NCBI RefSeq assembly: GCF_021869535.1
Contig: NW_026262681.1
Coordinates: 186,001 to 250,000, forward strand
DNA from: Mytilus californianus
Lineage: Eukaryota
Reading direction: 5' to 3'
Length of the DNA: 64,000 bases
Part shown: positions 14,162-21,100 of the stretch, one piece after another
Layout: every line of letters starts with the position of its first letter
Numbering within the stretch: the first letter of the stretch is position 1
The notes under the pieces: model-generated
Database searches by the model: none
The model's input: only the letters and a program-made list of their open reading frames with translations
Told to the model about the DNA's origin: nothing
Made by a program: the position numbers and the translations under genes

Positions 14162-14205
<44 letters not shown>

Positions 14206-17200
14206 TGCCTATAAATAGCAGCACATGACATACAAATCTATGGGAGTGTGGATTAATCAGTACAGAGATTAATTCAATTACACAAATAAAATTATAGATT
14301 GCCTAACAATGTAATTTTAACACACTATTTAGTATGTAAATATAAGAATGTTTAAAATATTTACAAAATGATGAAAATAAACGCAATATTTCGCTAGACT
14401 AACTAGCTTTATCAAGCGTGCATCTATCCAGGTGAAATCGGATGTAGATGATAAGAAACTTTTGCAGCTCAATGTATATGTTGCACTTGAATTTAGCTGC
14501 CTTGAAAATAATACATAATTTGGATGAAGTTCAAGATTTTTACAAAATTGGTAGTTGAAGTTAGCAACGTCCATTGGCCAATATTACAGGATAAAAAGGA
14601 CGATATTGTGTACTAAATTATTCTTTATCTTTCCTGTATCTTTTCTCATCTTTTTCGTTAAGACCATCAGGTTCTAAAGTGTGGAGTTGGTGGATCCAAA
14701 AATTTTCTTGGAAGAGGGGTCTAAATACAGCACAAACAACATTTTCCAAAAGACCAAATGAGTGAAAAAGTATATTTTAACAAAACGCATTTGACTTTAT
14801 ATATATATAAAGAAAAGTTAAGTAGAATCTGTATGCTGGTAGCATATAAGAAAATTAATAAATGATAATACTTTTACTAGCGCTTTCACTGCTTTTACAA
14901 ATCTTCACAGGTAACTTGACTTGTACACATAAGTGTTATAAAACAATTGATTGACATTAACAATAGTATGACGTTAACAAATACAAGGGAGACTACTAAT
15001 GTCATTTTAAAATTGGAGTAAAGTCTTTATATATATATATATATATACATCTTATTTCTTACTTCAGTGTATTAGTAATATATATCTTTATATTTTTTTA
15101 TATTTCGTACTAAAATGTGCAAGTAATATAAATGTGTGTAAATAATATATATCTTATTTTGTACTTCAATGTGTAAGTAATATATATCTTTTTTTTATTT
15201 CATACTTAAAGTTAAATGTGTAAATAATATACATGTATATCTTTCACATTTCTAAAATTGTCCGTTTATAAATTTTGAAATTATAAAGAAACTAAGGTTT
15301 CAACTCCCTCAGGCAAAGTTGACCTTAGATGAATTTGGCTATTTATTTTGGGTATTTTTGTCATATAGCTCTTCAACTGTTTCGGTACTTATACATCCCT
15401 CGGATTTCAAATGTTTGGCATTGAGCGTTCCTGATAAAGGTAAATCCAGAAAAAGCGCTTCGGACGCATGAAATTATTAAACGTGTTGTTTTCAATTTTG
15501 TACTTCAAAGTGTAAGTAATGTACATCTTTAATATTATCTCACGAAGCGTTTTCTGTTGTTTAAAAACACCCTAAATATTGATAAATGTCAATGCGTTAT
15601 ACAGAAACTTATTCAAAATCATGTAAGAATGTGTTTTACTTACATTGCAAGCACTGAAACCGGTTCCTTGGAATACACAAATATGGCCGTCAATTATGTT
15701 ATTGCCAGTCCAATAGTTTCTGCACTCACTGTTTCGAAGCACTTGCATGCTTAATGATTGTAAAGTAATGGGTAAACCGCCTGCAAAATAAAAATCGGCA
15801 ATTTCATAAAATGGGCGTACCAGAGAAACATTATTATAGATGTTTTCATGAATAATGCAATTGTCCTAAACACTAACTATTCCCGCAGGCAAAAGTTGAT
15901 CTTGAACATTTTGGGCCTCCATCTTTTGTTCCATTTGAATTTGACACTCTCTAAAATTATATGAATGATAAGCGTCCAAACCTTTTGGCCTTCATATGAT
16001 ACCAAATGTATGGCATTCCAGAAAAAAAATATTGTGCGCTTAGAAATAAGTATCGTATGTTTTAATAACTATATCAATAGATCATTGCTGGTGGAACAAC
16101 ATTTCCCGAGGGTCCAATCCGCTCAATAGACAACTATAGAACTTTGCAATTCTTTGACAAAATGTATAGTTTATATAACGCTATTTCTAAACACATAATA
16201 AAAAGTATGAGTCATGGAGCTTTAATTTTGTTAAGCCAAATGTGCGAATTTTTTAGAATTTGTCATGATTATACAATGAAAAAACGCTTTTGTGTGAATT
16301 GAAAGAAAACTTAACAACAGAATTTAAAAAAAAAGATATGGGAAGATAGCTGTTATAATGTGCTTTCAGAAAATTAAAAAGAAGAATGGGAACACTGTAC
16401 ATGTTTTCTTGCTGCCAAACAAAATAGATGAATTACGTGTTCATTCCTTTATATTATTGAATTATCTGAGTTATCTTCCTTAACATGGCAAAGTTGAAAA
16501 TAATGAATCTTTCCGAACCTGTGAAAAAACAGTCGTAATAATATGAAAAACATAATGATTAAAAGTCTTACAGATTAATTGCACTCCTGTCTCATAATTG
16601 GCAGTAATTCCCCATTTCCATTCTCAATTTTAATATATATTGTTATAAATGTATATTTAAAGAATATTCACTAGGAGCTTGTAAGGTGTGTATATATATA
16701 TACAAGTCTAAATTGAAAACAACGTTCAAACCTATGATTGCGTTGGATAAAAACCGCAATTTTTATACGTGTGCATGCAAAACAAATTTCTTGGTAGAGG
16801 GGTCTAAATACAGCACAAACAACATTTTCCAAAAGACCAAAAAGTGAAAAAGTATATTTTAACAAAACGCATTTGACTAGCAGGTCGAACAACGGATGTT
16901 CTTAAACCCTGCTGACTGCCATGGCGATTGCCAAATAAACGGATCACAGATGTAACAAAATGGATCTTAATTTTAATCTAATACCAAATAGAAAACAAAA
17001 AACTTGCGGAAAAGATGGTATACCGCAAACATGAGGTGCAAAACTTTGTACACCATATCCGGATTTCGACAATTAATGTCTCTTCAGTGATGTAAGGAAT
17101 CGAAACGGTATTTGGAAGGCCATATAATTTACCTCAATTTGGGATTGACTCTCGAATTTTGAAGAGTCGAAATAGGATGAACGGATCATATAAACCCGAA

Positions 17201-18104
17201 GGCAAATATAATACAAGCCCAAACGAAAAAATATAAACAAGTCTAAATTGAAAACAACGTTCAAACCTATGATTGCGTTGGATAAAAACCGCAATTTTTA
17301 TACGTGTGCATGCAAACAAATTTCTTGGTAGAGGGGTCTAAATACAGCACAAACAACATTTTCCAAAAGACCAAAAGAGTGAAAAGGTATATTTTAACAA
17401 AACGCATTTGACTAACAGGTCGAACAACTGATGTTCTTAAACCCTGCTGACTGTCAATGGCGATTGCCAAATAAACGGATCACCAGATGTAACAAAATGG
17501 ATCTTTAATAATATAAATTTAATACCAAACAGAAAACAATAAACTTGCAGTAAAGATGGTATACCGCAAACAAAAGGTGCAAACATTAGTACACCATATC
17601 CGGATTTCGACAATCAATGTCTCTTCAGTGATGTTAGGGATCGAAACAGTATTTGGAAGTCCATAAAATTTATCTCAATTTAGGATTGACTCTTGAATTT
17701 TAAAGAGTCGAAATAGGATGAACGGATCATATAAACCCGAAGGCAAATATAATACAAGCCCAAACGAAAAAATATAAACAAGCATAAATTGAAAACAACG
17801 TTCAAACCTATGATTGCGTTGGATAAACACCGCAATTTTTATACGTGTGCATGCAAACAAATTTCTTGGTAGAGGGGTCTAAATACAGCACAAACAACAT
17901 TTTCCAAAAGACCAAAATAGTGAAAAGGTATATTTTAACAAAACGCATTTGACTAACAGGTCGAACAACTGATGTTCTTAAACCCTGCTGACTGCCATGG
18001 CGATTGCCAAATAAACGGATCACCAGATGTAACAAAATGGATCTTAATATTTAATTTAATACCAAACAGAAAACAATAAACTTGCGGAAAAGATGGTATA
18101 CCGC

Positions 18105-18149
<45 letters not shown>

Positions 18150-21100
18150 TCTGCAAACCTTTTCTGAGGTATGAACTTATATGTTCCACAAGTTCTGCAA
18201 TAATTTGTTTGAGGTATGAATTTGCATGTTCAACAATTTCTGCCAGACTTAAGTTTAGTTATGTACTTACATGTTCCACAATTTACGCCAGACTATGTTT
18301 TAGTAATGTACTTACATGTTCCACAAGTTCTGCCCCATCCAGTGATTTCACATGTCTGGCCAGCAAACTCGTCAGGACTTCCTGTTGCCAAAGTAATAGC
18401 TGAAATACTACCGGTTAATGACAAACTAGATGACATTTTCATCAATGCAATGTCATTTGGGAATGTTCCAGATCCTGAGTTGTAATTTTCGTGCTAAAAA
18501 ATAAGAGTTTAGAAAAGGCTATTTTATTTTGCCACAATACCAAAATGCAATGAAATAGCGTTTTTTATATACAAAAATGCGTGGGTTTCCAGTAATTGAT
18601 GAATTAAGTGCCAATCTACCTAAGAATCAGGCAGTGGTGAAAACATGACAAACAAAAACCCACTCAAGTTGACATTAATTTATGTTCAAAATGTATAATG
18701 GTGCACAAATATGACATTCGTTTCCTTTTCTTGTTCTGGTAATTCAAGATATAATTTGGTTGAAATGCACTAGAAATAAACAATTAAGGGGAGCTAACTC
18801 CGTAATTTGCTATCATTCTAACCAAAAGATATCTAGAGATTTCTCGAATTACCAGACACACGCGGAGAAACAAAAGACCTACCATTTCTAACTCAGGATG
18901 AAGGTAACTTCAAAATAGGATGGTTAAGTCGGTGGGTTTTTTTTCGGCCATGTTTTGAAATTTTTCTAAATTGCCTGATTCTTACAAAGACTGGCACTTA
19001 ATTTTTTTAATGTTTTTTGCATTCTACTTTGCAAATGTTTGTTCTACAATCTGTTTTACAAATAAAATTTCGTGTCAATATATTGCATAGGAAAAACTCA
19101 AGAGCCAGTTGGGTTACCGTCTTCGGCATTGTTATGTCTGTATGATATTATTTTCACCTGACATATAACAGTATATTAAATTATGAAAATTTACATACTA
19201 TTATTCATTTACTTGTAGCTTTCTTTCAGTCATTTTAACAGAATGCAGACAATATATGAATAATATTTCAATATGACTTATATATTACTGCATATCACTT
19301 GGGTAGCCATATGGCTTATGCCCGATGATTAGATTCGGACCAAATTCCAATTAGTCAATCATGACATATCGGTATTGCTACATGCTTAATGCTTCCATGC
19401 CTAACACGAAATAAATGAGGAAATCGGTTTATTAGTGATTTTTTCGTGTTTGGATAATTTATTTACCAGAAACCCCTTTTTAAAGGTTGGCCCAAATTCA
19501 GTGTAGTGTCGTATACTATTTAGACAAAACTAGCTTTCTTACTTATTCAATTTTGGCACTGAAAAGTCAAAAAAAAAATTTAATACCATTATATATGTGA
19601 TCAAAATTATTAACATTACTGTTAGACTCGAGTGTCATAAACATTTGAATATAATGTAATGATATGATGGGGTTTATATTTAACATAAGACTGCACTGTC
19701 AAATCTCTTAAAATAGCCTTTTATCATACCTCCTATACATTTCTAGGATTATCATTGGTTAAAATCGACCGCGTGGAGATCGTGTATATTTAATATGGGG
19801 TTAGTAGGCTTGGTTTCGTATAAGGTCACTAGATCTCTGTGTAACTAATAATACACAATTGTGTTTAGGGTGATAATGCAGCCTTGTCAATACTAAACAA
19901 ACAAATATAATACCCTGAATGATTAAAGGAATAAATGATCAGAATTTTACCGGTACGATGAGCTCTATACTTCTCGTAGTCCCACCACTGCCATGATTTG
20001 AAGATCCTGCTCGAATCCTGTAGTCCTGTCTGAAAACAAAGAAAAAGAAAATATGTATTATATTATCCCTAAAAATTACCGTTACTTGATATAATAAGAG
20101 TGGTGTTGAGATATAAATTTAAAAAAGAAATCTCTTTAGCTCTGTAGTGGATTCGTGTGCCTGGTCCAAAGTCTAAAACCTCGTCGGTTGCATACTGTTA
20201 TAAAATATTCTATACAGATTTAGTGTTCTTTCGCTTATTGCAGTCAACAGTATTTTTAAAAGTACGATTATGTAGTGGAATAATAGTTTACCAGGTATAT
20301 ACATGTACCTACATGTAACAAACACTTTTAAACAGACTCTTTTGATGTATTGGTATACTACATTTTTTTATTATTACAAATTACTTACTAGTATTGCATT
20401 TACTTTAATATTAGATGTTTTCATTTAAATCAACGCTAATCATGTTATGTTTAATCTAATTTTTTTTTTATATTATGTTTGAAAATTATGATTGTTGATT
20501 ATTCTGCTCATTTTGGGCGCCGTGATGGGCAAATAAAGTATTTGTTTGTTTGTTTGGTATAAATATGTGGAAATGACACTCTGCTAGGTTGAGGAATTAT
20601 TCCAGTGACCCTAAACCGTGGTTTGTCGTCCTTGTTAAATATTATAGACTTCTCGAATGAAAACTTCTTTTATCAACTGCACTTAAAGGAGGCGAAATAC
20701 CACAAAATGTTTCTAGGTAAAAAAAGAAAAGGTACGCACGGGTTCCTTCCCTGTGGAAGTTTAAATATAGATAAGCTTATAGGTGTGGTATATTGTCCAA
20801 ATTTTGAATCCAAATTATTTTTTTAATTCTGCTGTAAAGGAAATATCTTCACATTTTTATATAATAGTAGATCTTGATGTGTGCACTTAAGTTCAGAAAA
20901 TCCGTGTTACAATATATCCGTATACTTACGGTCTGGAACTGTCAACACAATGTGCAGCCGTTACAATCCAATCTGCATTCACGATGGCACCCCCGCAAAT
21001 ATGGCTATTACTTCTTTGTAGGGACACTTGATGAGGGTGCTGTGAAATTGTTGTATCTACACCACCGACGATTTTCCCAACTCCGTCATCGACCTGAAAT

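What the first reader, a model, noticed from the sequence alone, without database searches (positions are those of the whole stretch)
16702..18105. Sense-oriented tandem hammerhead array (541-nt retrozyme) in an intron of a digestive-type protease gene
Seen: about 2.6 tandem copies of a ~541-bp unit between two (TA)n tracts in intron 5. On the minus strand, which is the protease pre-mRNA strand, there are exactly two complete type-I hammerheads (CUGAAGA core, GAC/GUC stem II, GAAA, AUA triplet, 6-7-bp stem I), with cleavage sites at 17597/6 and 17056/5. Stem III is the palindrome AUCCGGAU, too short to fold as a monomer but able to form an 8-bp helix between the two copies. The two ribozymes differ at one loop-II base while their flanks differ at many positions. 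Established: minimal dimer-dependent hammerheads in tandem repeats define non-LTR retrozymes, which yield circular RNAs and occur in metazoans including mussels. Inference: host-gene transcription could release a 541-nt RNA or circle co-transcriptionally while cutting the intron twice. That would make the protease promoter a tissue-specific retrozyme factory and/or a ribozyme-based control on splicing and mRNA yield. The partial-full-partial layout fits reverse transcription around a circular template.
Basis: partly seen in the sequence, partly recalled or inferred. Interest (0 to 1): 0.9.

Follow-up and report, generated by a model that had tools for sequence, protein, structure and literature searches.

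The report
Hammerhead retrozyme array in protease intron
This is one ordinary copy of a very abundant mussel "retrozyme", a small non-coding mobile element that carries self-cutting hammerhead ribozymes. It sits in the sense direction in an intron of a trypsin-like protease gene, and nothing found here shows that it does anything for or to that gene.

Summary
Window 16696-18105 holds 2.6 head-to-tail units of a 541-nt repeat flanked by (TA)n. It lies sense-oriented in a 2,535-nt GT..AG intron of a trypsin-family gene on the minus strand. There are exactly two complete type-I hammerheads, cutting after A17597 and A17056. Their palindromic helix III (AUCCGGAU) is predicted to pair between the two copies as a double hammerhead.

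It is not special to this gene. The same hammerhead occurs 14,197 times in this 1.65-Gb genome, against 0 for a reversed control. Sampled arrays mostly end at unit position 366 next to (TA)n, and their 5' ends vary. Units within an array usually share variants. Helices I and II show almost no variation. This fits a non-LTR retrozyme copied by rolling-circle, target-primed reverse transcription.

The family differs from the published ~360-nt Mytilus retrozyme, which is also present here (5,763 copies). I found no description of it in the papers I could search.

RNA reads show family transcripts in both orientations. They give no read-end pile-up at the cleavage sites and no locus-specific signal. 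The "protease-driven factory / splicing control" idea is unsupported. First-stage readers of this scan noted hammerhead tandem arrays of 533-544-bp units on other DNA of this genome.

The parts
16696..18105 (-). Whole array: 2.6 head-to-tail units of the 541-nt repeat, 34.5% G+C, no long ORF
17597..18105 (-). Unit 1, 5'-truncated (family consensus positions 29-541), 96.3% identical to the consensus
17056..17596 (-). Unit 2, complete. This is the 541-nt RNA that two hammerhead cuts would release. 97.0% identical to the consensus. Sense-strand fold z = -2.1, antisense z = +0.25
16696..17055 (-). Unit 3, ending at the family's most frequent 3' end (consensus position 366, ...UUAGACUUGU-UAUAU) and running into (TA)n
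17591..17634 (-). Hammerhead 1: helix I ACAUCA/UGGUGU, CUGAAGA, helix II GACA/UGUC with loop UUGAU, GAAA, UCCGGA, UA. Cleavage after A17597
   Evidence: Rfam RF00163 full-length alignment at 22.1 bits
17049..17094 (-). Hammerhead 2: as hammerhead 1, but helix I has 7 bp and loop II is UUAAU (the family consensus). Cleavage after A17056
18105..18146 (.). (TA)21 tract at the 5' junction of the array (target microsatellite)
16691..16702 (.). (TA)6 tract at the 3' junction of the array
15781..18315 (-). Host intron: 2,535 nt, GT..AG, phase 1. The array is 56% of it
18316..18493 (-). Upstream host exon (...NDIALMK...GWGRT), Pfam Trypsin 7.8e-09. Covered by RNA-run contigs
15644..15780 (-). Downstream host exon (...ECRNYW...DGHICV...SACN), in frame with the upstream exon. 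No Pfam hit on its own

Best explanation
The array is one inserted copy of a high-copy, non-coding retrotransposon family of the non-LTR 'retrozyme' kind, in a mytilid mussel genome.

Inferred life cycle:
1. A multimeric transcript of the hammerhead-sense strand folds so that two neighbouring hammerheads pair through their palindromic helix III, forming a double hammerhead.
2. Both cut, releasing a 541-nt monomer with 5'-OH and 2',3'-cyclic phosphate ends.
3. A host RtcB-type ligase circularises the monomer.
4. A reverse transcriptase/endonuclease supplied in trans, most likely from a Penelope-like element, nicks a (TA)n microsatellite.
5. The nicked DNA end pairs with the UAUAU at unit positions about 367-371 and primes cDNA synthesis round the circle one to many times.

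This would produce arrays with a common 3' end, a variable 5' end and (TA)n on both sides.

Shown here: the anatomy, the copy number, the insertion signature and the depletion of variants in helices I and II. Inferred: cleavage, circularisation and the identity of the mobilising enzyme.

The copy in the protease intron is a passenger. It landed in an intronic (TA)n tract, has since diverged (its units are 4-7% apart), and probably has little or no effect on the gene.
For: Two complete type-I hammerheads, and only two, in 64 kb. Rfam Hammerhead_1 aligns over the whole model in the expected structure. RNAcofold of the two segments gives the double hammerhead as the minimum-energy structure: -27.7 kcal/mol against -19.2 for the two monomers, whose own folds disrupt the core.

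14,197 copies of the motif in the genome against 0 for the reversed control. Arrays lie on many contigs at 94-97% identity.

About 11 of the 14 readable array 3' ends in the sampled loci stop at consensus position 366 and run into (TA)n. The 5' ends are scattered: positions 11, 29, 54, 237, 298-303, 318, 405, 438, 455-458 and 497. (TA)n is usually present upstream too. Three loci have adjacent inverted copies.

Units of one array share most of their non-consensus variants. Within-array differences are usually 2-16 against 28 +/- 10 between arrays.

Among 49 distinct units, the 20 helix I/II positions not fixed by my selection carry 0 substitutions. The same layout slid round the unit carries 7.7 on average (fraction at or below the observed value 0.002). 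Loop II varies freely.

The unit has low G+C (34.6%) and no ORF above 78 aa.

The published features of metazoan non-LTR retrozymes and of PLE insertions match: PMC7229834, PMC4209133, PMC8557442 and preprint 10.64898/2026.07.22.740005.
Against: Self-cleavage and circles were not observed. The Rfam score is below the gathering threshold (22.1 against 34 bits), and the wider Rfam scans gave no hammerhead hit.

The RNA reads show both orientations about equally and no pile-up of ends at the cleavage sites. That fits passive or read-through transcription at least as well as a sense-strand circRNA. The library type may also miss circles.

No autonomous partner was identified. The 30 GIY-YIG (PLE) loci sampled share no sequence with the unit, and their own hammerheads have a different build.

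The window's own units are nearly as different from each other as units of different arrays are. For this copy, the single-template origin is therefore inferred from the family and not seen directly.
Confidence: 0.8

Rival explanations
1. One reading: transcription from the protease promoter feeds the two sense hammerheads, so the gene acts as a tissue-specific source of 541-nt circles and/or the ribozymes throttle splicing and mRNA yield.
For: Sense orientation in a real intron, with exactly two intact hammerheads able to pair. There is a precedent for an intronic self-cleaving ribozyme that lowers host expression: the Cpeb3 ribozyme (PMC10919898, abstract seen). A preprint reports depletion of retrozymes from Xenopus introns, which would imply a cost.
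Against: It is one of more than 14,000 copies that insert wherever there is (TA)n. It is an old, diverged copy. The intactness of the two hammerheads is not statistically remarkable. Exon-only contigs show that the gene is still expressed. The raw RNA run gives zero exon depth but still has family reads in both orientations, so those reads come from elsewhere. Introns cut by slow hammerheads are still spliced (PMC2995048). The published Mytilus retrozyme hammerhead, a different family with the same build, cleaved slowly in vitro (kobs about 0.1 per min), and this one needs the second copy 541 nt downstream.
Confidence: 0.08
2. These are solo or tandem pseudo-LTR pieces of an autonomous Penelope-like element, not an independent non-autonomous family.
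For: The insertion signature is PLE-like: 5' truncation, partial tandems, adjacent inverted copies and a (TA)n bias. The preprint finds that retrozymes are related to PLE pLTRs. Two of the 30 PLE loci have a 541-family array next to them.
Against: Every array sampled has the same 541-nt period and no coding insert. BLAST finds no homology between the unit and the sampled PLE loci, which carry a different min-hammerhead with a 6-bp helix II and a 3-bp helix I. The two adjacencies amount to only about twice the chance density of the family.
Confidence: 0.1
3. It is an ordinary dispersed satellite that spreads at the DNA level (unequal crossing-over, segmental duplication), with the hammerhead as an inactive relic.
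For: It is a tandem repeat with low G+C. Rfam scores it below threshold. No cleavage ends appear in the reads.
Against: A common 3' end at one nucleotide position, with unrelated flanks and (TA)n targets at many loci. Helices I and II are depleted of variants while loop II is not. The core is perfect in 14,197 copies.
Confidence: 0.05

Closest known systems
Mytilus galloprovincialis non-LTR retrozyme (Cervera and de la Pena 2020, PMC7229834)
   Same: Both are short tandem repeats of low G+C, each unit carrying a type-I hammerhead with a 6-bp helix I, a 4-bp helix II and a palindromic helix III. Both are non-coding and dispersed in thousands of copies. The published family is present in this same genome: 5,763 motifs with a period of about 355-368 nt.
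   Different: BLAST finds no sequence similarity. The unit is 541 nt against about 360 nt. The hammerhead differs: CUGAAGA / UCCGGA / AUA triplet against CUGAUGA / CGCGCG / GUC. There are 14,197 motifs against 5,763. The 541 family ends at unit position 366, about 175 nt upstream of the next cleavage site, inside (TA)n. The eight sampled copies of the published family end about 45 nt after the cleavage site with no (TA)n.
Newt satellite 2 and axolotl retrozymes (dimer-dependent type-I hammerheads)
   Same: Helix III is too weak to fold alone, so activity is expected only when two copies pair.
   Different: Vertebrate, about 330-350 nt, unrelated sequence. Activity was tested there but not here.
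Penelope-like elements and their pLTR min-hammerheads (PMC4209133, PMC8557442)
   Same: 5' truncation, partial tandems, adjacent inverted copies, a (TA)n microsatellite bias, and a hammerhead near the terminal repeat.
   Different: No RT/GIY-YIG ORF. The hammerhead has the canonical metazoan build, not the min-HHR build found in this genome's sampled PLEs (6-bp helix II with a bulged C, 3-bp helix I). No sequence homology.
Intronic self-cleaving ribozymes of host genes (Cpeb3 HDV-like ribozyme, PMC10919898; amniote intronic hammerheads HH9/HH10, from my own knowledge)
   Same: A sense-oriented self-cleaving motif inside an intron of a protein-coding gene.
   Different: Those are single-copy and conserved across species at one locus. 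This is a recent repeat copy with no sign of locus-specific conservation.
Plant LTR retrozymes (PMC4918200)
   Same: Non-autonomous, hammerhead-bounded, and proposed to move through a circular RNA intermediate.
   Different: Type-III hammerheads, LTRs with PBS/PPT, high G+C, 600-1000 nt, mobilised by Gypsy-type elements.

Membership tests
Hammerhead ribozyme, type I (Rfam RF00163) | Conserved core CUGANGA ... GAAA ... UH with G10.1-C11.1 and A15.1-U16.1 | tested here: met
   Both copies have CUGAAGA, G-C as the first pair of helix II, GAAA, and the AUA cleavage triplet.
Hammerhead ribozyme, type I (Rfam RF00163) | Three helices with the open end at helix I | tested here: met
   Helix I 6-7 bp, helix II 4 bp, helix III palindrome AUCCGGAU. 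The CM aligns model positions 1-45 of 45 in register.
Hammerhead ribozyme, type I (Rfam RF00163) | Score at or above Rfam's gathering threshold | tested here: not met
   22.1 bits against 34 (E = 0.0013 on a 91-nt stretch). No hit in the whole-window or 1.6-kb scans.
Hammerhead ribozyme, type I (Rfam RF00163) | Site-specific self-cleavage | not testable with these tools
   Only a thermodynamic prediction of the double-hammerhead fold. No pile-up of read ends.
Metazoan non-LTR retrozyme | Head-to-tail tandem repeats, each unit carrying a type-I hammerhead, with low G+C | tested here: met
   541-nt period and 34.6% G+C. The hammerhead is at every intact unit boundary in the sampled arrays.
Metazoan non-LTR retrozyme | Non-autonomous: no coding capacity | tested here: met
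   The longest ORFs in the array are at most 78 aa and repeat with the unit.
Metazoan non-LTR retrozyme | Dispersed multicopy family with marks of retrotransposition | tested here: met
   14,197 motifs. A common 3' end, variable 5' ends and unrelated flanks.
Metazoan non-LTR retrozyme | Accumulates as linear and circular monomer RNA | tested here: inconclusive
   Family reads are present in RNA runs, but in both orientations, without end pile-ups. A tandem reference cannot tell circles from multimers.
Metazoan non-LTR retrozyme | Monomer size in the reported range | tested here: inconclusive
   541 nt is above the 170-400 nt reported for metazoan retrozyme RNAs, but inside the 51-972 bp reported for vertebrate families in the 2026 preprint.
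Autonomous Penelope-like element | ORF with RT and GIY-YIG endonuclease domains | tested here: not met
   No such ORF in the unit. No homology to the genome's sampled GIY-YIG loci.
Classical satellite DNA | Long homogeneous arrays spread by DNA-level mechanisms, without defined element ends | tested here: not met
   In the sampled loci most arrays have 2-7 units, a defined 3' end at position 366 and (TA)n targets. Longer runs do exist, for example about 25 units on C1.

The most novel reading that the evidence does not exclude
The two sense-strand hammerheads really do cut the protease pre-mRNA in the tissue where the gene is on. The host promoter would then drive production of a 541-nt circular RNA and measurably lower or gate the protease mRNA. 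That would be a retrozyme copy co-opted as an intronic ribozyme switch.
Probability: 0.07. Interest if true: 0.65.

Novelty: new member of a known kind. Interest (0 to 1): 0.3.

Why it matters
For the protease gene it probably does not matter: this is a passenger repeat.

At family level there is modest value.
- This mussel genome holds a second retrozyme family that I could not find described in the papers I searched. It has about 14,000 hammerheads, roughly 0.5% of the genome, and is larger and more numerous than the published family.
- Its common 3' end at a UAUAU stretch and its (TA)n targets point to where reverse transcription would start on the presumed circular template.
- That gives a concrete, testable handle on how retrozymes are mobilised, and on the proposed dependence on Penelope-like elements.
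- The depletion of variants in helices I and II argues that the ribozyme is needed for propagation.

Tried and rejected
- Rfam at gathering thresholds on the whole window, and at E <= 10 on 1.6 kb, gave no hammerhead. Only the 91-nt scan recovered RF00163, below threshold.
- My first DNA-pattern call was malformed, and one Pfam call had a frame error.
- Read evidence: no pile-up of ends at 17597/17596 or 17056/17055. No usable joint for an empty site, because the flanks are (TA)n. The protease exons have zero depth in the only raw-read RNA run. So there is no locus-specific expression, cleavage or polymorphism evidence either way.
- Search for the autonomous partner: the 30 best GIY-YIG loci carry their own min-hammerhead, and only one of those printed ends in (TA)n. 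None aligns to the 541-nt unit.
- Homology between the 541-nt unit and the published ~360-nt family: none.
- Full-text search for the hammerhead sequence in papers: none.
- I dropped the apparent clustering of 5' ends at positions 489-497. It is an artefact of BLAST pieces splitting at an indel. My own BLAST shows scattered 5' ends.
- The idea that this copy's two hammerheads are conserved beyond chance: one difference against about two expected, which is not significant.
Full report
**What is there**

Read on the minus strand, window 18105 to 16696 is a head-to-tail array of a 541-nt unit. Direct repeats are spaced 541 nt apart. BLAST against a family consensus built here gives unit positions 29-541, then 1-541, then 1-366. 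The array is bounded by (TA)21 at 18105-18146 and (TA)6 at 16691-16702.

A structural descriptor scan of both strands of the whole 64-kb window finds exactly two complete type-I hammerheads, both on the minus strand. Each has:
- helix I of 6 bp (ACAUCA/UGGUGU), or 7 bp in the second copy;
- a CUGAAGA core;
- helix II of 4 bp (GACA/UGUC) with a 5-nt loop;
- GAAA, then the palindrome UCCGGA, then UA.

Cleavage falls after A17597 and after A17056.

**Is it a hammerhead?**

Rfam's covariance models gave nothing at gathering score on the window, or at E <= 10 on 1.6 kb. On a 91-nt stretch, Hammerhead_1 (RF00163) aligns over all 45 model positions in the right register at 22.1 bits, below the gathering score of 34. 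The Rfam consensus itself has a loop-less palindromic helix III (ACGcgCGU), the same build as AUCCGGAU here.

Each segment folded alone prefers a structure that disrupts the core (-9.1 and -10.1 kcal/mol). Co-folded, the minimum-energy structure is the double hammerhead: an 8-bp intermolecular helix III and helices I formed in trans, at -27.7 kcal/mol. This matches the published description of metazoan type-I hammerheads: helix I 6 bp, helix II 4 bp, and helix III 1-2 bp capped by a small palindromic loop, active as dimers (PMC4209133).

**Gene context**

The minus strand encodes a trypsin-family protease. Exons carrying IVGG...TAAHC, NDIAL...GWGRT and GDSGGP hit Pfam PF00089 with E-values of 1e-15, 8e-09 and 4e-12. 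The array lies between exon 18493-18316 and exon 15780-15644. The intron (18315-15781, 2,535 nt) has GT..AG ends and is phase 1, and the two exons join in frame. The array is 56% of the intron.

The sense orientation is confirmed. The intron number and the 'digestive-type' label are not verified. Contigs limited to the exons in two RNA-type runs indicate that the gene is expressed.

**It is a genome-wide family**

The 541-nt unit matches arrays on many contigs of the 1.65-Gb assembly at 94-97% identity. The hammerhead pattern with this helix III occurs 14,197 times, against 0 for the reversed control. At 541 nt per unit, that is about 0.5% of the genome.

In the loci fetched, about 11 of the 14 readable array 3' ends stop at consensus position 366 (...UUAGACUUGU, then U/A, then UAUAU) and run straight into (TA)n. 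The 5' ends are scattered: positions 11, 29, 54, 237, 298-303, 318, 405, 438, 455-458 and 497. (TA)n is usually found upstream too. Three loci have an adjacent inverted copy.

A common 3' end, 5' truncation, partial tandems, inverted neighbours and a (TA)n bias are the published marks of insertion by Penelope-like elements (PMC8557442). They also fit the rolling-circle model proposed for non-LTR retrozymes (PMC7229834; preprint 10.64898/2026.07.22.740005). The simplest mechanistic reading is that a nicked (TA)n end pairs with the UAUAU at unit positions about 367-371 and primes cDNA synthesis round a circular or multimeric template.

**Single-template origin and selection**

Units of one array share most of their non-consensus variants and usually differ by 2-16 positions. 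Units from different arrays differ by 28 +/- 10. This fits a single template, or local homogenisation.

Among 49 distinct units, the 20 helix I/II positions that my selection did not fix carry no substitutions. The same layout slid round the unit carries 7.7 on average, and only 0.2% of shifted layouts do as well. Loop II varies freely. One stem-II double change that keeps pairing (GAUA/UAUC) is seen on C1. This is the best evidence here that the ribozyme matters for propagation. The sample is small and consists of the copies most like the query.

**This particular copy**

Its three units are 95-97% identical to the consensus and differ from each other by 4-7%, almost as much as units of different arrays. 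It is therefore a comparatively old insertion. The two hammerheads differ only at one loop-II base. About two differences would be expected in that length, so this shows no locus-specific constraint.

**RNA evidence**

In the one raw-read RNA run, reads at 95% identity or better cover the array at depths of roughly 1-95 per bin, in both mate orientations about equally. Other bins of the same run are strongly one-sided, which suggests the library is stranded. The protease exons have zero depth, so these reads come from other copies of the family. No place shows a pile-up of molecule ends.

On a tandem reference, a circle junction looks like a unit boundary, so circles cannot be seen this way. 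The data therefore show that family RNA exists. They give no support for cleavage in vivo, for a sense-strand excess, or for any link with the protease promoter.

**Comparison with what is known**

The published M. galloprovincialis retrozyme clone carries a different hammerhead (CUGAUGA, helix II GUCU/AGAC, helix III CGCGCG, GUC triplet; supplement of PMC7229834). That family is present here with 5,763 motifs at a period of about 355-368 nt. This, together with the close match of its flanks, places the window in a Mytilus-like mussel by inference.

That family shares no sequence with the 541-nt unit. The eight copies I sampled end about 45 nt after the cleavage site, without (TA)n.

The genome's sampled PLEs (GIY-YIG loci) carry a min-hammerhead of the PLE build, with a bulged C, a 6-bp helix II and a 3-bp helix I. 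They do not align to the unit.

No paper in the searchable library contains this hammerhead's sequence. First-stage readers of this scan flagged hammerhead tandem arrays of 533-544-bp units many times on other pieces of this genome, including one reported as sense-oriented in a GST intron. I did not check those notes.

**The host-gene hypothesis**

Intronic ribozymes can affect their host, as the Cpeb3 ribozyme does (PMC10919898). However, introns cut by ordinary hammerheads are spliced normally, and only fast ribozymes abort splicing (PMC2995048). The one Mytilus retrozyme hammerhead assayed in vitro, from the other family but with the same build, is slow at about 0.1 per min. The one here also needs the partner copy 541 nt downstream to be transcribed first. 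The Xenopus preprint reports a modest depletion of retrozymes from introns, although 42-44% of copies are still intronic. I put a measurable host effect at under 10%.

**Verdict**

This is a new member (a distinct family) of a known kind of element. This copy is an ordinary passenger. The family-level features are the part worth following up: the (TA)n targeting, the common start point for reverse transcription, the abundance and the conserved helices.

Noticed in passing
window 18165-18334 (minus strand): A 45-bp tandem repeat (3.8 copies) starts inside the exon's end and repeats the exon end plus the 5' splice site. A second perfect GUGGAACAU|GUAAGUACAU lies exactly 45 nt downstream of the real donor (GT at 18270-18269). 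Two further copies are degenerate. Using the second donor would read into a TAG stop.
   Followed up: partly
window 14690-14796 (minus strand): A 107-bp fragment of the same 541-nt family (unit positions 183-291, 92.7% identity) lies in the next intron of the protease gene, in the same orientation.
   Followed up: no
G000 genome-wide; loci L061-L068: The published ~360-nt Mytilus retrozyme family (hammerhead with a CGCGCG helix III) has 5,763 motifs here. The sampled copies are older (76-96% identity), and all eight end about 45 nt after the cleavage site (...GAUGAGUUUAU) without a (TA)n target. It may therefore depend on a different mobilising enzyme than the 541 family.
   Followed up: partly
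L036-L054, e.g. G000:C110:55838761-55862602: A Penelope-like element family with an intact 755-aa open frame, present as tandem copies at 3,927-bp spacing. Each copy carries a min-hammerhead (CUGAUGA, bulged C, GGUGCC/GGCACC, GAAA, CAUG, UC) about 870 nt downstream of the GIY-YIG match. Several copies end about 75 nt after it; others run on for a further ~100 nt shared between copies.
   Followed up: partly
window 14167-14834, 15169-15502, 16505-16671, 18509-19000: These intron stretches flanking the array have DNA-run depths thousands of times above the single-copy level of about 43. They are other high-copy repeats, which I did not identify.
   Followed up: no
G000:C1:3722480-3722511: A copy of the 541-family hammerhead with a double change in helix II that keeps pairing (GACA/UGUC to GAUA/UAUC).
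   Followed up: no
L056:753 (G000:C2, about 28.7087 Mb): A hammerhead with the CGCGCG helix III and GUCU/AGAC helix II of the published family (loop UACUU) lies about 750 nt upstream of a degenerate GIY-YIG match, on the same strand. It could be chance adjacency or a link to a PLE terminal repeat.
   Followed up: no
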